A stretch of 35,086 nt of DNA, taken from assembly GCA_013416795.1 (NCBI GenBank), contig RQSC01000022.1, positions 222,720 to 257,805 on the forward strand. Direction: 5' to 3'. Shown in pieces: positions 9,024-19,521 of this stretch. Position 1 is the stretch's first letter. Each line of letters opens with the position of its first letter. The notes under the pieces were generated by a model. It was not told where the DNA came from and ran no database searches. It was given only the letters and a program-made list of their open reading frames with translations. The position numbers were made by a program, and so were the translations under genes. Source of the stretch: Prasinococcaceae sp. CCMP 1430 (lineage: Eukaryota; Plantae; Prasinodermophyta).

Positions 9024-11584
9024 CGCGCGTGTGTGTATGTGTGTGTGTGTGTGTGTGAGTGCGTGTGTGTCAGGACGTGTGCACGTGTGTGTGTGGTTGT
9101 GTCGGCAAACGTGCAAATGTTTGTGCGCGTGCGCGCGCGCGCACGTGTGCGCGCCGCACTCACGTGCTCCTCGCCGAACTCGGCCACGGCGCCGTTGTAC
9201 CCGCCCGCCACCGCCGCGCGCACGCGCGCGGCGTCCGCGTCGAGGTGCGCCAGGAAGTCCGAGTCGCTCGTGACGCCGTGCGAACGCTGCGCGTATGCGC
9301 GTGCACGAGTGTGTGCGTGTGCCAGATGCGTGTGTGCGAGTGTGTGTGCGAGTGTGTACCATGTGTGTGTGTGCGTGAGCGCATGCGTAGGCGTGTGTGT
9401 ATGCGTGCGTGTGCGTGTGCTCGCGTGCGTCAGATGCGTGTGCGTGTGTGTATGCGTGCGTGTGCGTGTGTGCGTGTGTGTGCGTGTGCCAGATGCGTGT
9501 GTGCGAGTGTGTGTGCGAGTGTGTACCATGTGTGTGTGTGCGTGAGCGCATGCGTAGGCGTGTGTGTATGCGTGCGTGTGCGTGTGCTCGCGTGCGTCAG
9601 ATGCGTGTGCGTATGTGTACGCGTGCGTGTGCGTGTGTGCGTGTGTGTGCGTGCGCGCGCGTCTCCGCGTGGCGCACCTGCGCTGGCCCGACCACCGCCT
9701 TTCGCGGATGCAACGCGGGCGAGGGGCGCGCGCGCGCCTGCCCAGACAGCGAGGACGCGTGCGAGCTGCCTGCATTTCCCGCGATGTGGATGTGCGCGGG
9801 CTGGACGGCCTTGCTCGAGCCCGAGCCTTTCTGGGCGGACGCCCCCGCGGCGGCCTTCCCCCCCGCCGCGCCCGCCGGCGGGAGTCCCCTCGCCACCGCC
9901 TTGGCGAGCGCCATCGCCTCCGCCGAGTCCCCCTGCTCGCGCACGAGGCGCGCCCACTCGCGCGGGAAGAGCTCCGCCAGGCTGATCACCATCTGCGCCC
10001 ACCGCTCCGCGAAGTCCTCCGCCTCCGCCTTCTCCACCGGGTTGAACATCCTGAAGCAGTCGTTGTTGTGCGCCCGCAGGTCGCCGTAGATCTCCCACGT
10101 GGACGAGAACGGCACGCCGTTGAGCTTGAACATGTGGTCCGACGCCGTGCCGTGCGCCAGGTAGCCCACGCTCGAGCCGCCCGAGCCCACCACGCACTTG
10201 CTCTTGCAGTGCCGCCTGTTGAGCTCGGCGAGCACCGGCGGCATGGCGACGCCCGCGCTGGCGTCCGTCACCTCCAGCGCGTGGTCCCACGGCAGGAACA
10301 TCGCCTCCATCCCCGAGTGCACGTTGATCCACGCGTGCGGCTTGAAGACCGACGCGAGCTCGTTGAGGATGTACGCCTCCGGCTCGGACAGCGGCGCCGT
10401 CCCGGGATACTCCTCGGCGGGGTCGTAGTCCTTCTCCTTGACGCCCCAGTCCACCTCGAAGTTGCGGTTGGTGTCCACGCCGCGCCCGTTCTTGCGCTCG
10501 CAGAGCTTGCCCGACTCCACCCTCGCGCGCCCGTTGACGTTCTCCAGCGGCACCACCACGAACGCGACGCCGCGCAGCGACGCGGGGACGTCGGCGGGCG
10601 ACGCCACGGAGTCGCCGCCCAGCGCCTCGAGGTGCTGCAGCAGCCGCAGGCACGTCTCCGAGGTGATGAGCTCCCGCCCGTGCTCGCCGTAGTTGAGCAG
10701 GATGCGCACGCGCGCGGCGGCGTCCTCGCCCGCGCCCGCGCTGAGCGTCGCCTCGGCCGTGCCCGCGCCCTCGCCCGCGCCGTCCCCCTGGGCGACGAAG
10801 TCGGCAGCGGCGCCGCCGGGGACGATGGTGAGCACCGGGAAGGCCACGGAGTAGCCCCCCTGCTCGCGCTCAAGCGTGTGCGAGCGCATCGTGCGCGGGT
10901 TGCGCGCGACGATGCGCGCGACCTGTGTGTGTGTGCGCGCACACGCGCGTGTGTGTGCGTGCGTGCGCGTGCGCGTGCGTGGTGTGTGTGCGTGTGTGTC
11001 AGCACGCATGCGCAGCTGCAAGCGCACTGCAAGCGCGTGTATGCATGTGCGCATGTGTGTGCGCACGCGCGCGCGTGCGAACGCGCGCGTGCGCGCGCGC
11101 GTGGGCAGCGCCTCCGACCTCCTCGAAGAGCCTCTCGGTGGTGTGGTAGACGGAGAAGTCGGGCTTGGCGATCGGCGCCGCGCCCACGCGCGCGCGCAGC
11201 GCGCGGCGCCCGGTGGCGAGTGCTGTGCGTGTGCGCCAGGTGCGCGCGCGCGCGTGTGCGCGTGCGTGGGCGCGTGTGTGAGCGCGTGTGTAGGCGTGCG
11301 CGTGGGTGCGTGCTCGCGTGTGTCAGATGTGTGTGCGTGTGTGTATGCGTATGTGTGTGTGGGTGTGTGTATGTGTGCGTGTGTGTGCGCGCGTGTGCAT
11401 GGCGCACCTGCGTCCGCGTCCGCGTCTGCGCGAGGGAGGGCGCCGCGCCGCGCGACGACGTCATCGATGACAACCGCAGCCTCGCCCTCGCCCTCGCCCA
11501 GCGCCGCGGCGGCGGAGGCCGCGAGCGCAGCTGTCGCGACGAGCGTGTGTGTGCGAGGCTGTAAGCCAGGTGTGTACGCGCCAT
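8744..11584 (-). CDS. M14-family zinc carboxypeptidase with signal-peptide-like N-terminus and C-terminal TM helix (5 exons)
   Basis: Exons: about 11584-11408, 11222-11119, 10922-9678, 9286-9164, 8887-8744, joined in frame by GT-AG introns. M14 motifs: YHT, GEHGRE (HxxE), RKN..VDTNRNF, INVHSG, WEIY. TM segment [24 protein letters not shown]. Using the ATG at 11584 needs a 2-nt slip in a CA run (probable assembly error), so the start is uncertain. Confidence 0.85.
9311..9644. repeat. 167-bp tandem duplication inside carboxypeptidase intron 3
   Basis: Anchor motifs recur exactly 167 bp apart (CAGATG at 9323/9490 and at 9431/9598). Confidence 0.9.
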
Positions 11585-11640
11585 CGCGCGAGCGAGCGCG
11601 AGCACGCGGTGTGGCGCGCGGGCAGGCACGCGCGCACACA

Positions 11641-11672
<32 letters not shown>

Positions 11673-11694
11673 TGACCGCACACACACACACGAC

Positions 11695-11729
<35 letters not shown>

Positions 11730-12950
11730 CGTGCAGCTCTGCTGCGGCCACCAATTCGGTGCGCACCGTCGCACGCGAACGCGCGCTCAACCGCGCGGGC
11801 CCGCTCAAATCCCCATATGGATTTTGAAAAGAGCATAAAGCTTTACTAGATTCGATTTGACCATGAACCGTCGGAGTTTGTTACAGAAATTCTGTGCGTT
11901 GGCGAAGGCTCCTCGTGGTGCGAACCCGCGCCATTAAATGCATTGAAGAGTGCCCGATCACGGCCATAGCCACCGCAGTGGCATTGCGCCAGAGCGCTTC
12001 CTGCATCCTCACCATCCTTTCGGACGTGTCCGAGAATGACATGCGAAGGTCGCCGTCGCGGGTCGACTTGGCCCGCGCCGCCTGAGCTCACCTTGGCGGA
12101 GAAATACAGATCCACGCTGAGCCCGGGCGCGTCGCGCTCCCCGTCGCGTTGCGCGCACTCGTCCGGTCCGCGGCGCCGCCCGAGGGTCATGTGAGGCAGT
12201 CGAGAGGCGAAGAGCAGTGGCTAGCCACTGCGCAAGTACACCAGGCGACAAATGCCTATAAGCGTGAAAGGCGCCGCTCCTGTACGCATAGCACTCTTTC
12301 TTGGTTTGGCAGCCATCGTGAGCCCTGAATGTTGCGAACACATCAGGATGGATGTGAGTACTTTCGCACGGCTGCGGACTTATGGTCGTGCTTCTAGACG
12401 CGACTCATGAGCTCGCCGAGCAGCTGCAGCATGTGCTCCGGCGCAACGTCGGTGAGCACAACCGTCGACGGATGCGGCACGTGGCAACGCCGCGTTTAGC
12501 CCTCCGGGCTCCAACCTGTGTTTGGAGCCCTCCGGGCTCAAAATAAACCCTGATCATCACCCCAAAATTCACCCCAAACCTTTTTTTTTTTTTTGGCGCG
12601 CGCACTACCGAATGCATCCGAATATGAATATTGTGCGCGCGATCGTGCCGGCGATCGCGCAGCAGGCGCCACACCGCTGCCCTCCCCCCCCCCCCTCCCC
12701 CGCTGTCCACGTGCCCGCGGCTCCCTCGCGCGCAGCTCGGGGTGCGGAGGGGCGCGCGGCGCCGCGCTGCGCGAGCGCGCGCGAAGGGGTGTGGTTGAGG
12801 AGAGGCGGGGAGGCCGCGGCGCTTTCGCCGCGGGGCGATCGGGGCGGTTCGAAAACGCGCGGCGGCGCTCCCCCTCGGCCCGCCTCCCTCCTCAGCCCCG
12901 CCGTCGCCGCCTCCGCGCGCCCGCCGGCCTGCGTGCACGCGCGCGACGCG

Positions 12951-15806
12951 ATGCCCAAGGACATCCGCTCGTTCTTCGGTGCCAAGCCGGCCGGCAAGCC
13001 CAAGGCCGCGGCGCCGGCGCCGAAGCCCGCCGCCGCCCCCGAGGCGTCGACGCCGAGGAAACGCGAGGTCGACCTCACCGTCGCGAGCGACGACGATGAC
13101 GACGGTGACGACGACTTCGTGATTGACGAGAGGCCTCGCAAGCAGGCGAAGTCGAAGGCCGGGGGCGCGCGCGCCTCGCCCAAGCAAACGCCGAAGCGAT
13201 CGCCCAAGCAGCCTCCCTCGCAGCCCGCCGTCGCGTCGCCCACGCTCAACGAGCCGATGCCCTCGCCGCCGGAGCTCGCGGGCGCGCCGGCGGTGACGGG
13301 CGCCGAGGCGCGCCGCGCCAAGCTCGACGCGCTGTGGCACGCGTACTTCGACGCGCCCGGCGGCTTCTTCGACAACCGCGCGTCCAAGTCCAACGAGCGC
13401 GCGCCCGACTTCAAGCAGAAGGGCACGGGCGAGGCGCTGTGGGTGCGCGGAGCGCCCGCGTGGGCGCGCGCGAAGCTCGCCGAGGCCGAGAGCGGCGCTC
13501 CGCAGCAGCAGCGGAACGGCGGCGGCCCGGCCGTCCGGCCGCGCCGACCGGCGCGCCCGCCAACGCCGCCGGCCGCCCGCACTGGATGCGCGCCTCCGAC
13601 GAGGACATGCGGCCGCCTCGCAAGGGCCAAAAGCCGCCGCCCCCGCGCGGCCAGCACGACGCCCTCACCGAGATGCGGCCCGCGCGCAAGGGCGAGGCGC
13701 CGTCGCCGCAGCCGCTGACCTTCGTGATTACGGGCATCATGGAGAGCCTGGAGCGCGACGAGATGGAGGACTATATCAAGCGCCACGGCGGACAGACGCG
13801 CTCCTCCGTCTCGGGAAAGACGACGCACCTCGTCAAGGGCGGCGAGCCTTTCTCGGAGGGCAAGCTGGCCAAGGCGGTGGAGCTCAAGCTGCCCATCCTC
13901 GACGAGGACGGCGTCATCGCGCTCGTGCTCAGGGCGGGCCCGCCGCAGGCCGAGCCCGCGCCGGCGCCCGCCGCTGCGCCGGTGGTGGCGCCGGCTGGCC
14001 GCCGGCGGCGGAGGCGCGGCGGGCGCGGGGGGGCAGTCTGCCGGCGGCGCCGCGGGCGAGCTCTGGACGGACAAGTGGGCTCCTCGGGAGTTGGACGACC
14101 TCGTGGGCGGCGCGGCCAATGCCAAGGCCATCGGGCGCTGGCTGAATGAGTGGGACATGAACTTCAACAAGAGGAAGATCGTCCCCAAGACGAGCGACAA
14201 GAACGGGCCGAAGAAGGCGGTGCTGATGAGCGGCCCGCCCGGCATCGGGAAGACGTCGATGGCCAAGCTCATCTCCAAGCAGTTCGGCTACAGCGTCATG
14301 GAGGTCAACGCGAGCGACGCGCGCGGCAAGGCCAACGGCGACGTCCTCAAGGGCGTGGGGGGCTCCACCGCCAACCGGGTGCGCGAGCTCGTCACCAATC
14401 GCGGCCTGTCGTTCGGCAAGGCGGGCATGGGCAAGACCACCGAAGGCAAGACGCTCCTCATCATGGACGAAGTGGACGGCATGTCCGCCGGCGACCGAGG
14501 CGGCGTGGCCGACCTCATCAAGACCATCGGGCTGAGCAAGATGCCGATCATATGCATCTGCAATGACAAGTACTCGCAGAAGCTGCGCTCGCTGCAGGGG
14601 CACTGCATGGACATGACCTTCCGCAGGCCTACCAAGCAGATGGTCGCCAAGCGCCTCGGTCACGTCGCCCGCGCCGAAGGCCTCCAATGCGATGAGATGG
14701 CGCTGCAGCAGCTCGCGGAGGAGTGCAACACCGACATACGCCTCAGCCTCAACATGCTTCAGATGTTCGCGCGGCGCGCGAGGGTCATGCGCTTCGATGA
14801 CGTGAAGCAGCAGTTCGCCGCGGGAGGGAAGGACGTGGACATGTCCATCTTCACCATCATGGACCAGCTAATGGGCGCGCACGCCGCCACCATGACCCTC
14901 AACCAGCGGCTCGACCTGGTGTTCCACGACGCGGACCTCATGCCCCTCTTCGTCGCGGACAACTACATCAACTACATGACCAGCAAACGGCAGGACGAGG
15001 CGTTCCGGATGGAGCGGTGCGCGCGCGCGGCGGACGCCGTTTCGCAGAGCGACGTCATCGCGCGCAAAGTACGGGCGGAGCAGATGTGGGCCCTCATGCC
15101 GCTGCAGCTGGCGCTGGGGTGTGTCGAGCCGGCGGCGCTCATGCGCGGCGGTCGCGAGGCCTTCGGGCAGTACGACTTCAGGCCGCGCTTCCCGGCGTGG
15201 CTCGGGAAGATGTCCTCTACCAACAAGAACACGCGCTTGCTGCAAGAGCTCAACACCCACATGCTGTGCACGGGCGAGTACCACGGCACCCCGCTGTCGA
15301 TGCGCATGGACTTCGTGCCCACGCTGCGGGCCCTCCTGTCCGCGCCGCTCAGGGATCGGTCCATGGGCCCCGAGGAGGCCGTGCAGCAGGTGCTGGAGAA
15401 GCTGGACTCCTATTCGCTCACCAAGGACGACTTCGACACGCTCATGGGCGAGTTCCAGCTGGCACGCGGCAGGAAGAAGGACGCGCTCGAGGGCGTCGAG
15501 TCCAAGACAAAGGCGGCGCTCACGAGGCAGTACAACGCCGGCGGGCACCACATGAAGTCGTCGGTGATGATGAAGGACGGCGTGACGAAGGGCAAGAAGC
15601 GCAAGATCAAGGCGGAGGCCAACCCGGATCGCGCGGGAGACAATGACGTGGTTGCCATGGACGACGCCCCGCCTGACGCGCTCGAGGAGGACGACGAGGA
15701 CAGCGACGGAGACGCCATCGCGGGGCTCATCAGCAAACGCGGCAAGGGCAAGGCGAAAGGCAAGGGCAAGGCGGCGGCGAAGAAGCCCAAAAAGGCCAAG
15801 AAGTGA
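12951..15806 (+). CDS. RFC1: Replication factor C subunit 1, with N-terminal PDF motif, BRCT, AAA+ and RFC1 C-terminal domains; two frame discontinuities
   Basis: N-terminus MPKDIRSFFG. BRCT LTFVITGIMESLERDEMEDYIKRHGG..SVSGKT at about 13715-13930. ELWTDKWAP precedes Walker A GPPGIGKT, then EVNASD, Walker B MDEVDGMS and PIICICND. Acidic and basic tail. The frame shifts -1 near 13530 and +1 near 14000. Confidence 0.93.
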
Positions 15807-15873: not shown

Positions 15874-17383
15874 TCAGTCGTCGGCGTTGCGCCCGCCTTT
15901 CCCCTTCTTGCCGTAGGTGCGCCCCATGGCCTTGTGCTTCTCGCTGAGGCCGCGCTGCACGTGTCGCAGCTTCTTCTGCTCGCGCGTGTACGCCGCGCGC
16001 GCCTCGATGTCGCGAGCGTCGCGCTTGGCCTTGGCCTTGTTGCGCCGATCCTGGGCCTCCCTCGCGCGCACGCGGCTCTGGTTGCGGATGGCGTTGAGCT
16101 GCGCGACCAGCGTGGCCGCCTTGCGCTCGTCCTTGTCCATGACCACCGCGCGGCGCTGCTCCAGGGTCTGGCGCTTGCGCTTCTTCTCGATCTTTGGCTT
16201 GGACTTGAACGGCAGCTCCGCCTGCAGCGCCTTGGGCACCTTGAGCGACGAGAACTTGCGCGGCGCGCGGTCCACTGCCTTGTACACCGAGTCAGCGTTG
16301 AGCGGCGGCGCCTCGCCCGCCTCGCGGCGCATCTGCCCGACGGTGCGCATGCCGCTCCACTCGACGCCGGGCGCCGCGAGCATGGTGTCGGTGGGCACGC
16401 AAAACCTTGGCACGTCAACGGGCACCCACGCGCGCAGGAAGACGATGTCCGAGAGCAGCAGCTTGTCCTCGAACGTGCAGCGGCACGCGCCCTCGCCGCC
16501 GCCGTCGGTGGTGCGCAGGGCCTTCTTGATCTGGCCGCGCACGCCCGACACCGTGCGCACGCTCGCGCCCTCGAACTTGGCCACCTCGAGCGCGCTGCTG
16601 AACATGTCCTTGATGAAGGCGGTGTTCTTGAACGTCTTGAAGGGGTAGCCTACGAGCTTCAGCTTCTTCACCACGCGGACCTGGGAGTCGCGCTCCAGCG
16701 TCACGCCCGTGGCGGTCACGCGGAAGCCGCGCGCATTGGAGCCGAGCGTCGAAAAGCAAATCAAGCCGGTGTTCTGCGGGACCACCGGACCGAAGAAGCT
16801 CGCGAGGCAGTGCATGTGCTCAGGCGTGTACTTGAGCATTCGCTGGCGACCGTTGGAGTCCTCCGTGGCGAAGAGCGGGAGCGTCTGGAAGCGGCGCCAG
16901 CCGCACGACATGATCACGGGATCGCGATTCTTCAGAACCTTGCGCGCCCAGCGGTGCTTCTTGAAGCGCGCCTGCATGAAGCCGTAGCCCTCCTCCTGAG
17001 GGGGCACGCCGCCCAACACCATGGGGCGTCTGGCGTCGAAGTGCTCCACCAGCTCCTTGGGCATGCCGTGCAGCAGCAGGCGCACGTACGCGCCCGGGCG
17101 GTGGCCCTCCAGCTGCACGCGCCGCTGCGCGTCGAGGCCCGCGGTGATGGCCAGGCCGCGCGCCTGGTCCTCCTCGAGGCGCCTCTTCTCCTGGGCGAAC
17201 CACGTCTGCTCTTCGGGATCCTCCACGTCGTCGTCCGCCTCGGCCGCGCCGCCGGCGGCTTGATCGCCCCCGCCGCCTCCCGCCACGTCCGTGTCCGACT
17301 TGAACCCACCCGCGTCGTAGGCGCTGTTGAAAGACGCCTTCTTCGCGAGTTTGGCGGCGCGTCGCAGCGCCGCCTCGTCTTCA

Positions 17384-17417
<34 letters not shown>

Positions 17418-18072
17418 TTGACGCACCCGCCCCGAACTTCTCGCCAGTCTCCATGTCCTCGAAGTCTCCGTACACCGCCTCGCCATCGTCGTCGTCCCCG
17501 ACGCCATCCGCAAGGCCGAGCTTGCGCCGCTCCGCCGCTGCCCAGTCGCCGGTGACGAACCGATTGCGCAGCGTCTCGATGGTCTCGTCGGGGTCCCAGC
17601 CGCGCGACTCGTGCCGCACGCGCGACGAGTCCGGCGCGTCCACCCCGCCGCCGGCCGCCGGTGCATTGGACGCCGCACGCCCGCCCTCGTCGGCGGAGCC
17701 CTTGAGCACGAAGAGGTCGTCGCCCTCCTCGTCGTCCTCGCTCTCGTCGAGCCCCGCCGCGGCCGCGGAGCCACCGTCCTGCGACACCTTGCCCGATCCA
17801 GCGAGGCTGCTCTCGCCATACACGACTTTCATGAGGTCCACGCGCCCCAGGGCGGCTGACGCGCGCGCGGCCATGCCCGCCTTCCAGCGCGCCGACGCGC
17901 CGCCGTCGGCGTCGTCGTAGTCACCCTCGTCCTCGTCCTCGTCGTCGCTGCTGCCCGCGAACGCGAGCTCCTCGTCGCCCCCCTCGCCGCCTGCGGCCCC
18001 GATGCCCGGCAGCGCGCGGCGGCGCACGCGGCCATCGCCCGCCACCACCTCCGCGTCAACGCCGGCGCCGTA

Positions 18073-18112
<40 letters not shown>

Positions 18113-19521
18113 CCATCGCTGCCGTCGCTGCCGTCGCTGCCGTCGCTGTCGTACTCGTCGTCCGACGCGCCCGAGACGTCATCGCCGTCCTCATCGTCAC
18201 CCTCACCCTCGTCGCCACTCCCGTCGAGGGCCGGCGCCGCGATGCGCCTGCCGCCGCTGATGAGCTGGATATCGGCGCCCTGCAGCCTGTCGTTGATTGT
18301 GGTGGAGGCGTCCTGTAGCGCGTGCACCATGCCCACACCCTCGTCGGGCTCCGCGTCGTCCGCCCCGGCGGCGCCGTCTGCATCGCCCTGCTGCTGCTGG
18401 CGCTTGGAAAAGTTGACCTTCCAGTCGTCGATGTTGACGTACACGCCGTCCTTGTCGTAGAGCATCTCGCCCACGTTGCCCATGGGCGCGTAGATGAGTT
18501 GCTCCTTCTCTACGAGGCGGCGCTTCTTCGCCTTCTCGGGCAGCGGGCAGGGGTCGGGCAGCGCGGCGACGGCGGCGGTGCCGTAGTCCCCCGCGCCGGC
18601 GATGTGCACGCGCGCGCCGGCCTTGAGGTTGGCGCCGCGCAGGTAGCCGAAGACGGCCACCGAGCGGTTGGCCGTGGGGTCGGCCTCCACGAGCGCCGGG
18701 TCGGTGACGTCCTCGAAGCGGTCGGCGAGCACGTAGGGGTGCGCCAGCCGCCAGCTGAGCGGCCGCACCTTGGCCAGGCTCACGAAGCGCGCCAGGTTGA
18801 GCGTCTCGCGCCGCGGGTAGCGCCCGCCCGCGCCCAGGCCCGACAGGTAGAACAGCTTGGCGCCGTCGTAGATCTCCCCCCAGAAGCGCTGCTTCAGGCG
18901 CTTCTTCACCTTCTTAAGGCGCTTGGAGTCCTTGAAGCCGTCCAGGTGCGTGAGCACACCCATCACCTTGGGAAAGCCGTGCGTCTGCAGCACGTTGAGA
19001 AACTCGAAGGTCTCCATCTCGAAGCCGAACGAGCCGTCGATGGCCAGCAGCGCGAGGTCGGCCACCTTGCAGCAATCGATCATGCCAGGCAGGTCGTCGG
19101 GGCACTCCACGAAGGTCACGCGGCGCTTCTTGCCCGCGACGATGGTGACCGGCCCCACGACGTCACGCAGGCCATGCTTTGTGAAGTGCTTTACCAGCGA
19201 CTTGATGATGGTGCTCTTGCCGACGCCGGGGGGGCCTTGCACGACGACCGTGAGCGGCGGCGGGTCGGCGTCGACGGCCGCCTCGACGACGGGCGCGTGC
19301 AGCCGCCGCTGCGCTCGCTCGCTCGCGCGGTGCGCGCGCGCCTTGGCGCGCCTGCCGGAGAACTCGAGCTCCTTCTTGGAGTTGCCCGTGCGGTCGACGG
19401 TGTCCACGCCGCGCCTCTTCTTGTCGGCGAGCTTGCGCTTGTCCGCCTTGCGCCCCGCCAGCCGCGCGCGGTGCGCCTTGGACGTCTTGTCGAGCGCGCG
19501 CACGTTGAAGACGTCGCCCAT
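15874..19521 (-). CDS. BMS1: Ribosome biogenesis GTPase BMS1 (intronless, 1215 aa)
   Basis: [88 protein letters not shown] and [16 protein letters not shown]; long acidic central insert. Confidence 0.97.

What the first reader, a model, noticed from the sequence alone, without database searches (positions are those of the whole stretch)
13332..13478. RFC1 clamp-loader subunit carries an OSB-type PDF ssDNA-binding motif
Seen: in frame with the RFC1-type N-terminus (MPKDIRSFFG at 12951) is LWHAYFDAPGGFFDNRASKSNERAPDFKQKGTGEALWVRGAPAWARAKL. Established: this fits the PDF motif of plant organellar ssDNA-binding (OSB) proteins (LW..FF.NP..WWDNR..K.N...PDFKHK.TGEALWL....P.W), while RFC1 normally has only a BRCT in this region. 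Inference: a nuclear clamp loader has recruited an organelle-type ssDNA-binding module, which may sense primer-template ssDNA or imply organellar or dual function. I do not recall this fusion being described.
Basis: partly seen in the sequence, partly recalled or inferred. Interest (0 to 1): 0.82.

Follow-up and report, generated by a model that had tools for sequence, protein, structure and literature searches.

The report
Clamp-loader RFC1 carrying a PDF domain
In a GC-rich marine green picoalga, the large subunit of the DNA clamp loader (RFC1) has acquired a small single-stranded-DNA-binding module so far described only in plant organelle proteins. The fusion is real but restricted to two related lineages, and its role is untested.

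Summary
Window 13302-13487 encodes a genuine PDF domain. An HMM built only from PDF repeats of OSB-type proteins hits it at E 4e-20 and hits nothing else in the window. All ten near-invariant family positions are kept. Its AlphaFold model (pLDDT 93) matches only the PDF domains of Arabidopsis OSB1-4 in Swiss-Prot.

The domain lies between the RFC1 N-terminal DIRSFFG box and the BRCT domain. In the window the BRCT is in another frame, because of 8 extra bases at 13527 and 35 missing bases at 13996. A contig from a run of the same organism and a TARA metagenome contig both lack these two differences. Both read as one intronless ORF of about 960 aa, so the breaks are most likely assembly errors.

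A second lineage (74% identical RFC1) carries the same fusion. About 165 other RFC1s, including other green algae and land plants, do not. No searchable paper mentions it.

The suggestion of an organellar or dual function is not supported. There is no presequence, and PDF repeats also occur outside OSB proteins. The most likely role is a tethered ssDNA-binding module beside the BRCT 5'-DNA site, helping recognition of gaps or primer-template junctions. That role is inferred, not shown. This is a new architectural variant of RFC1, of moderate interest.

The parts
12951..15806 (+). RFC1 (large clamp-loader subunit) gene. It is intronless and reads as one 960-aa ORF once the two local assembly indels are set to the state seen in reads.
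   Evidence: Pfam finds BRCT, AAA, AAA_lid_RFC1 and the RFC1 C-terminal domain. The best named homologues are plant RFC1. The ORF is continuous after applying the X1 contig's indel states, and 948/961 residues are identical to P0001.
12951..12980 (+). N-terminal RFC1 box MPKDIRSFFG, the start of the protein.
   Evidence: The same box opens Prasinococcus RFC1 (MPADIRSFF) and occurs in Klebsormidium RFC1. The upstream sequence is not conserved as coding.
13302..13487 (+). PDF domain, about 62 aa, with predicted helix, beta strands and helix.
   Evidence: OSB-only HMM: 65.3 bits, E 4e-20. AlphaFold pLDDT 93.4. Foldseek top four hits are the Arabidopsis OSB1-4 PDF domains at TM 0.70-0.83. Identity to the second lineage is 59% with no gaps, against 30-37% in the flanks.
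13488..13579 (+). Gly/Pro/Ala-rich flexible linker between the PDF and the BRCT region.
   Evidence: pLDDT is 50-64 in the two-domain model, and conservation is low.
13527..13534 (.). Eight bases present in the window but absent from reads of the same organism and from the TARA contig. They shift the frame from 0 to 2 and are a probable assembly error.
   Evidence: read laying reports 'left out 8' at 13527 in an X1 contig that otherwise has 0 mismatches. The alignment to L001 shows the same.
13580..13924 (+). BRCT region: N-terminal extension 13580-13714 plus BRCT core 13715-13924. In the window it is in frame 2.
   Evidence: Pfam BRCT E 2.9e-12. pLDDT is 88-97 in the model.
13996..13996 (.). 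Site where the window has 1 base and reads have 36, so 35 bases are missing. This restores frame 0 and is a probable assembly error.
   Evidence: read laying tables 5 and 5c for X1. L001 carries the same extra 35 nt.
14220..14810 (+). AAA+ ATPase module (14220-14567) and RFC1-type lid (14637-14810).
   Evidence: Pfam AAA E 1.4e-12 and AAA_lid_RFC1 E 9.5e-13.
15039..15536 (+). RFC1 C-terminal domain (PF08519).
   Evidence: Pfam E 2e-42.

Best explanation
This is the nuclear RFC1 gene of a GC-rich marine green picoalga. Its nearest named RFC1 is that of Prasinococcus. In the common ancestor of two related lineages, RFC1 acquired one copy of the PDF domain. The PDF domain is a roughly 60-residue fold that, in plant OSB proteins, is reported to be sufficient for high-affinity ssDNA binding.

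The domain is an independently folded unit. It sits after the DIRSFFG box and an acidic and basic low-complexity stretch. A flexible linker of about 30 residues follows, then the BRCT N-terminal extension (about 50 low-confidence residues in all before the BRCT core). In yeast RFC, the BRCT region forms the external site that holds the 5' duplex end of a gap.

My proposed mechanism is inferred, not shown. The tethered PDF binds the single-stranded template next to the junction held by the BRCT and AAA+ modules. This would raise RFC's affinity or dwell time at ssDNA gaps and primer-template junctions and so favour PCNA loading there.

The two frame breaks in the window are consensus errors of the assembly, not features of the gene.

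The confidence of 0.6 is for the whole statement including the mechanism. The domain's identity and the reality of the fusion I put at 0.9 or higher.
For: Shown:
- PDF identity by an independent OSB-only HMM, by reverse phmmer, by conserved columns and by predicted fold.
- RFC1 identity by Pfam and homologues.
- One ORF in TARA contig L001, in the X1 contig of the same organism and in the 74%-identical lineage P0002 on three metagenome contigs.
- The two RFC1 PDFs are sister sequences with support 0.91, at the same position in the protein, nested among green-algal PDFs.
- PDF conservation is 59% without gaps, against 30-37% in the flanking linkers and 53% in the BRCT, which indicates constraint.
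- PDF and BRCT are predicted as separate well-folded domains joined by a low-confidence linker.

From the literature:
- The PDF of AtOSB1 is sufficient for ssDNA binding, and PDF domains give OSBs high-affinity ssDNA binding (PMC6963530, PMC13393729).
- The Rfc1 BRCT and AAA+ modules form a second site for the 5' duplex at gaps. BRCT deletion sensitises yeast to DNA damage (PMC9293004, PMC9293009).
Against: - No DNA-binding data exist for this protein or for any PDF outside OSBs.
- The primary OSB paper (Zaegel 2006) could not be read here, so the ssDNA claim rests on reviews.
- No RNA contig spans the motif itself. Transcript contigs of the organism cover 13018-13240 and 14036 onwards only.
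- The two tryptophans of the WWDNR core are F-F here and F-Y in the second lineage. Aromatic character is kept, but affinity could differ.
- RFC1s of all other sampled eukaryotes work without this domain.
Confidence: 0.6

Rival explanations
1. The PDF domain is real and fused to RFC1, but here it does not act as an ssDNA sensor. It could bind another ligand, such as RNA or RNA-DNA primers, structured DNA or a partner protein. It could also be a nearly neutral passenger domain.
For: Function was not tested. PDF arrays occur in proteins of unknown role that have no SSB domain. No solved structure or DNA complex of a PDF domain was found. The WW of the core is replaced by FF or FY.
Against: All ten near-invariant family positions are kept. 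The domain is conserved at 59% without gaps across two lineages while its flanks drift, which argues against a neutral passenger. The only biochemical activity reported for PDF is ssDNA binding (PMC6963530). The host protein is a DNA-junction-binding machine.
Confidence: 0.27
2. The fusion marks an organellar or dual-targeted RFC1.
For: The proteins in which PDF was defined, OSB1-4, are mitochondrial and/or plastid proteins (PMC4166229, PMC6963530).
Against: The protein starts with the canonical RFC1 box and has no presequence. The upstream in-frame sequence has a stop and non-3n indels in the TARA allele. There is a Lys-rich C-terminal tail, as in other RFC1s. No second RFC1 was seen, so this copy must serve the nucleus. 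From general knowledge, no organellar PCNA-type clamp is known in plants. PDF is not confined to OSB-type proteins.
Confidence: 0.04
3. The frame breaks in the window are real. The locus would then be a pseudogene or two or three separate genes, and the PDF ORF would not be part of a working RFC1 in this strain.
For: As assembled, frame 0 from ATG 12951 runs into a stop at 13716-13718, and the BRCT is in frame 2.
Against: A 5.6-kb contig from a run of the same organism matches 12700-14400 with 0 substitutions but lacks the 8 nt and carries the 35 nt. This gives an uninterrupted 960-aa ORF. Fifteen runs of the organism each hold 0.95 of the sampled words, which is roughly the loss expected from two indel sites (this link is my inference). 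The TARA allele has the same indel state. RFC1 is essential in the eukaryotes studied (general knowledge). Both sites lie in GC-rich low-complexity sequence.
Confidence: 0.06
4. The resemblance to PDF is chance or compositional in a GC-rich, Ala/Arg/Pro-rich ORF.
For: The genome has 67% GC and many spurious long ORFs.
Against: E 4e-20 with an independent profile and the only hit in the window. Reverse search gives E down to 1e-96 for multi-repeat proteins. The confident fold matches only the OSB PDF domains.
Confidence: 0.01

Closest known systems
PDF domain of plant organellar ssDNA-binding proteins (Arabidopsis OSB1-4)
   Same: The same roughly 60-residue domain. It gives a significant profile match, keeps all near-invariant residues and has the same predicted fold at TM 0.70-0.83 and rmsd about 1 A.
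   Different: The host protein is entirely different. There is no transit peptide and no OB/SSB-like domain. The domain is a single copy placed N-terminally in a nuclear AAA+ clamp loader. The WW of the WWDNR core is FF.
Canonical eukaryotic RFC1 (yeast Rfc1, human RFC1/p140, plant RFC1)
   Same: DIRxFF N-terminal box, extended BRCT, AAA+ module, lid and RFC1 C-terminal domain. The AAA+/C-terminal part is 40-49% identical to plant and Prasinococcus RFC1.
   Different: None of about 165 other RFC1 sequences scanned has a PDF domain. Here a folded ssDNA-binding-type module lies about 50 residues upstream of the BRCT core.
SSB-PDF proteins of marine green picoalgae (cluster P0241, which includes a Chloropicon member, and TARA cluster P0257)
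   Same: Among the more similar PDF sequences, at 53-54% identity. They come from the same kind of organism and are plausible relatives of the donor.
   Different: They carry a strong bacterial-type SSB domain (Pfam E 5e-27 and 7e-20), an N-terminal extension and an acidic ...PF C-terminal tip. They have no clamp-loader parts.
External 5'-DNA (shoulder) site of yeast RFC, formed by the Rfc1 BRCT and AAA+ modules
   Same: It offers a functional analogy: an accessory DNA-binding element in the Rfc1 N-terminal region that helps RFC recognise gaps (PMC9293004, PMC9293009).
   Different: That site binds duplex DNA with a recessed 5' end. By analogy with OSBs, the PDF would bind the single strand. 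No structure or assay exists for the algal protein.

Membership tests
PDF domain family | Significant match to a profile of PDF repeats from bona fide OSB proteins | tested here: met
   65.3 bits, E 4e-20, profile positions 4-58 of 60. The same holds for P0001 and P0002.
PDF domain family | Signature residues: the Pro-Asp-Phe triplet plus conserved W, D-x-R, K, L-W and P | tested here: met
   All 10 columns that are at least 90% conserved in 149 repeats are present in the RFC1 copy.
PDF domain family | Same three-dimensional fold as the OSB PDF domains | tested here: met
   The model has pLDDT 93.4. The only Swiss-Prot AFDB matches are OSB2, OSB1, OSB3 and OSB4 at TM 0.70-0.83. Both sides are predictions.
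PDF domain family | Binds single-stranded DNA | not testable with these tools
   Known only for OSB proteins, from the literature (PMC6963530, PMC13393729).
OSB proteins (organellar ssDNA-binding proteins) | Central OB-fold / SSB-like domain preceding the PDF(s) | tested here: not met
   No SSB hit in the N-terminal ORF or in P0001/P0002. OSB-type hits do show one.
OSB proteins (organellar ssDNA-binding proteins) | N-terminal organellar transit peptide | tested here: not met
   The protein starts with the RFC1 box MPKDIRSFFG. The upstream frame is not conserved as coding. No targeting predictor was available, so this rests on sequence inspection.
RFC1 (large subunit of replication factor C) | AAA+ module with RFC1-type lid and the RFC1 C-terminal domain (PF08519) | tested here: met
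   PF08519 E 2e-42, AAA_lid_RFC1 E 9.5e-13, AAA E 1.4e-12. All are above Pfam's cut-offs.
RFC1 (large subunit of replication factor C) | N-terminal BRCT region | tested here: met
   PF00533 E 2.9e-12. It is folded at pLDDT 88-97. The T-G, R and G-K positions of the phosphate pocket are visible in the sequence; that assignment is from memory of the human p140 BRCT work and was not tested.
RFC1 (large subunit of replication factor C) | One continuous coding sequence | tested here: met
   Not met in the window as assembled. Met with the read-supported indel states and in L001 and L002-L004.

The most novel reading that the evidence does not exclude
In this algal lineage, RFC carries its own ssDNA sensor. 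The PDF, BRCT and AAA+ chamber would together read all three elements of a gap: the single strand, the 5' junction and the 3' junction. Clamp loading at gaps or primed sites would then depend less on RPA. This would also show that the PDF fold, which has no solved structure, is a portable ssDNA-binding module used in the nucleus as well as in organelles, in green algae and, as arrays, in dinoflagellates.
Probability: 0.35. Interest if true: 0.7.

Novelty: new variant of a known kind. Interest (0 to 1): 0.55.

Why it matters
First, it takes the PDF domain out of its only described context, plant organellar OSB proteins, and places it in the core nuclear replication and repair machinery. This argues that PDF is a general, portable nucleic-acid-binding module.

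Second, it is a natural elaboration of the Rfc1 N-terminal DNA-binding region. The role of that region in gap recognition was only established structurally in 2022. A clamp loader with an added ssDNA-binding domain is a ready-made test case for how substrate choice by RFC can be tuned.

Third, Pfam has no PDF model, and the reference assembly breaks this gene's frame twice. Standard annotation would therefore miss or mangle the fusion.

The limits are that the fusion is seen in only two related lineages and that nothing about its function has been measured.

Tried and rejected
- A Pfam scan of the N-terminal ORF found no family, because Pfam has no PDF model.
- The word-indexed search with the 65-aa region inside the full-length protein found only the query itself, so it was too insensitive. 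The exhaustive HMMER search was used instead.
- Foldseek against the PDB and VIA-align wide gave no credible structural relative (best E 4.6; best Z 3.8). The fold's mode of DNA binding therefore cannot be inferred by analogy. I had suspected a dsRBD-like alpha-beta-beta-beta-alpha fold, and this found no support.
- I looked for small introns to explain the two frame changes. A GT..AG of 71 nt (13533-13603) has the right phase but would remove the conserved BRCT N-terminal extension. Reads show plain indels instead, so I rejected it.
- The PDF with the highest identity to the RFC1 copy (P0200, 59%) is not on an RFC1 gene. Its contig has three PDF exons and no RFC1 parts.
- The true 5' end of the second lineage's gene (L002-L004) was not resolved.
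- Zaegel et al. 2006 is not held in the library.
- Earlier notes from this scan contributed nothing.
- Only the best 150 of the 463 PDF hits could be seen, so further single-copy fusions at E above about 2.5e-8 cannot be excluded.

Full report
**What is in the window**

The window has 67% GC. On the + strand, an ATG at 12951 opens with MPKDIRSFFG. The same box begins RFC1 of Prasinococcus and occurs near the start of Klebsormidium RFC1. Downstream, Pfam finds a BRCT domain (13715-13924, E 2.9e-12). It then finds an AAA+ module, the RFC1-type lid and the RFC1 C-terminal domain (E 2e-42), ending at the stop at 15806. The best named homologues are plant RFC1 proteins at 40-46% identity and Prasinococcus capsulatus RFC1 at 49%. 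So the gene is RFC1 proper, not one of the RFC-like paralogues.

From the GC content and the Prasinococcus affinity, I infer a prasinophyte-grade marine picoalga, possibly Prasinoderma. That name is a guess from memory and was not tested.

In the window the three parts are not in one frame. The N-terminus with the motif is in frame 0, the BRCT is in frame 2, and the AAA+ part is back in frame 0. Reading from the ATG, the frame stops at 13716-13718.

I compared the window with a 6.9-kb TARA Oceans metagenome scaffold that encodes a 961-aa protein 99% identical over the AAA+/C-terminal part (P0001 on L001). The window has 8 extra bases near 13527 and lacks 35 bases at 13996. Apart from these, a 3-nt indel and about 1% substitutions, the two are collinear.

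Laying public runs on 12700-14400 gave a 5.6-kb contig from a run of the same organism. It matches with zero substitutions but leaves out the same 8 bases and has 36 letters in place of base 13996. Applying those two states to the window gives an uninterrupted ORF of 960 aa, with 948/961 residues identical to P0001.

Fifteen runs of the organism each hold 0.95 of the sampled 31-mers. That is about the loss expected from two indel sites; this link is my inference. I conclude, at about 90%, that the two frame breaks are consensus errors in GC-rich low-complexity sequence. The gene is one intronless ORF.

An intron explanation was considered and rejected. The only phase-compatible GT..AG would delete the conserved BRCT N-terminal extension.

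**Is the motif a PDF motif?**

Pfam has no model for it, so I tested in both directions.

- phmmer with the 65-aa segment against 1.84 billion cluster representatives gave 463 hits at E<=1e-3. Most carry 2-13 tandem copies.
- Named hits include Populus 'protein OSB1, mitochondrial-like' (E 9.4e-19) and Nymphaea 'Protein OSB2'.
- Of the 149 listed non-RFC1 hits, 81 have an SSB-like domain related to that of Populus OSB1.
- From these OSB-type proteins alone, seeded with the Populus PDF and without the window, I collected 220 repeats and built an HMM. It hits the six-frame translation of the window once, at 13326-13487, with 65.3 bits and E 4e-20.
- In an alignment of 149 diverse repeats, the ten columns conserved at 90% or more are all present in the RFC1 copy: W, D-x-R, K, P-D-F, L-W and P.
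- AlphaFold2 with that alignment gives a confident compact fold of helix, short strands and helix (pLDDT 93.4).
- In Swiss-Prot AlphaFold models, its only matches are the PDF domains of Arabidopsis OSB2, OSB1, OSB3 and OSB4 (TM 0.70-0.83, rmsd 0.9-1.4 A). Everything else is noise. The cluster library gives the same picture.
- No solved structure resembles it.

**Is it really part of RFC1, and how widespread is the fusion?**

P0001 carries the N-terminal box, PDF, BRCT, AAA+ and C-terminal domain in one ORF on genomic DNA. A second lineage, P0002, is 74% identical in the AAA+ part and is found on three marine metagenome contigs of about 65.5% GC. It has a PDF at the equivalent position, followed by BRCT and AAA+ in one ORF. 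Its true 5' end is unresolved.

Between the two lineages, the PDF is 59% identical with no gaps. The flanking linkers are 30-37% identical and the BRCT is 53%. The domain is therefore under constraint. In a tree of PDF repeats, the two RFC1 copies are sisters (support 0.91) within a group of green-algal repeats. This fits a single acquisition, although a 60-column tree is weak evidence.

The OSB-only HMM and a broader PDF HMM hit no other RFC1 among about 165 sequences. These came from land plants, Klebsormidium, Mesostigma, Volvox, Chlamydomonas eustigma, Trebouxia, Prasinococcus, Bigelowiella, animals and unnamed marine eukaryotes. A search scored on the PDF-to-BRCT region alone gives 492 and 188 bits for the two lineages and at most 72 bits, from the BRCT only, for everything else.

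No paper in the library contains both 'PDF motif' and 'replication factor C'. A 2026 survey of OSB evolution counted only proteins with both OB-like and PDF domains (PMC13393729).

**Anatomy and likely mechanism**

A model of residues 105-335 predicts two well-folded domains: the PDF (pLDDT 93-97) and the BRCT (88-97). They are joined by about 50 low-confidence residues.

According to reviews of the OSB work, the PDF of AtOSB1 suffices for ssDNA binding. PDF domains account for the high ssDNA affinity of OSBs (PMC6963530, PMC13393729).

In yeast RFC, the Rfc1 BRCT and AAA+ modules form an external site that binds the 5' duplex end of a gap. Loss of the BRCT sensitises cells to DNA damage (PMC9293004, PMC9293009).

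Putting these together, the best-supported reading is that the tethered PDF binds the single-stranded template beside the junction held by RFC. This would increase affinity or residence at gaps and primer-template junctions. That step is an inference, and I give it roughly even odds. The identity of the domain and the reality of the fusion I put at 0.9 or higher.

**The organellar idea**

I find no support for it.

- The protein begins with the RFC1 box.
- The in-frame sequence upstream of the ATG contains a stop and non-3n indels in the TARA allele, so it is untranslated.
- There is no SSB/OB domain.
- 'Organelle-type' is only guilt by association. PDF repeats also form long arrays, without any other recognisable domain, in Symbiodiniaceae dinoflagellates (Cladocopium, Effrenium) and in unnamed marine proteins.

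**Limits**

- Transcript contigs of the organism cover 13018-13240 and 14036 onwards but not the motif, so transcription of the PDF segment is not directly shown.
- One metatranscriptome contig appears to join 13284 to 13477. The shorter side matches only 21 letters, the ends are non-canonical, and its depth is ten times that of the contigs that truly match the gene. The tool itself warns that such joints usually come from other organisms. I treat it as noise but record it.
- Only 150 of the 463 PDF hits were visible, so other single-copy fusions cannot be excluded.

**Verdict**

This is a genuine, conserved and apparently undescribed domain architecture: RFC1 with a PDF domain. It is restricted to two related picoalgal lineages, and its mechanism is plausible but untested. 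It is a new variant of a known kind, of moderate interest.

Noticed in passing
window 13527-13534 and 13996: The reference sequence carries 8 extra and 35 missing bases relative to a contig of the same organism and to a TARA contig. Together these put the RFC1 BRCT domain out of frame. They are probably consensus errors, and similar errors may affect other GC-rich low-complexity coding stretches of this assembly.
   Followed up: yes
proteins P0131, P0133, P0285 (Cladocopium, Effrenium); also P0123, P0126, P0132, P0159: PDF repeats form arrays of 5-11 copies with no other Pfam domain in Symbiodiniaceae dinoflagellates and in unnamed marine proteins. This contradicts the published statement that PDF motifs are confined to green plants.
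   Followed up: partly
proteins P0257 (TARA cluster) and P0241 (cluster with a Chloropicon member): Marine green picoalgae have proteins with a strong bacterial-type SSB domain (Pfam E 5e-27 and 7e-20), one PDF domain and an acidic C-terminal tip ending in ...VPF or ...IPF, like bacterial SSB tails. These look like an OSB-like architecture outside streptophytes, where OSBs were thought to have arisen.
   Followed up: partly
L002 about 700-880 (same in L003, L004): The RFC1 ORF of the second lineage continues upstream of the called non-ATG start and then meets a stop. Just before that lie GTGAGC, CTGAC and a pyrimidine tract ending in CAG, which looks like a short 5' intron. No DIRSFF box was found, so the true N-terminus is unresolved.
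   Followed up: partly
window 13284 to 13477: One metatranscriptome contig (run X18) joins these two points, skipping 192 nt (64 codons), which is almost exactly the PDF domain. The match is only 21 letters on the shorter side, the ends are CG..GC, a 7-nt repeat AGCTCGC lies near both ends, and the depth is about 10 times that of true matches. It is probably another organism's transcript, but it could not be re-examined.
   Followed up: no
window 9560-11840: Dense (TG/CA)n-type microsatellite sequence gives long spurious CVCV/THTH ORFs on both strands, interleaved with what looks like a peptidase-like coding sequence on the minus strand. Another first-stage note calls this region introner-like.
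   Followed up: no
window 15874-19521 (minus strand); L001 3230-6162: A 1215-aa ORF lies tail-to-tail with RFC1, and the same arrangement is present on the TARA contig. It has a P-loop GTPase-like N-terminus and long acidic low-complexity inserts. It was not analysed.
   Followed up: no
L005 1298-1477, 1817-1951, 4052-4204: The PDF with the highest identity to the RFC1 copy (59%) lies on a 59%-GC eukaryotic contig as one of at least three separate PDF exons. No RFC1 parts lie nearby.
   Followed up: partly
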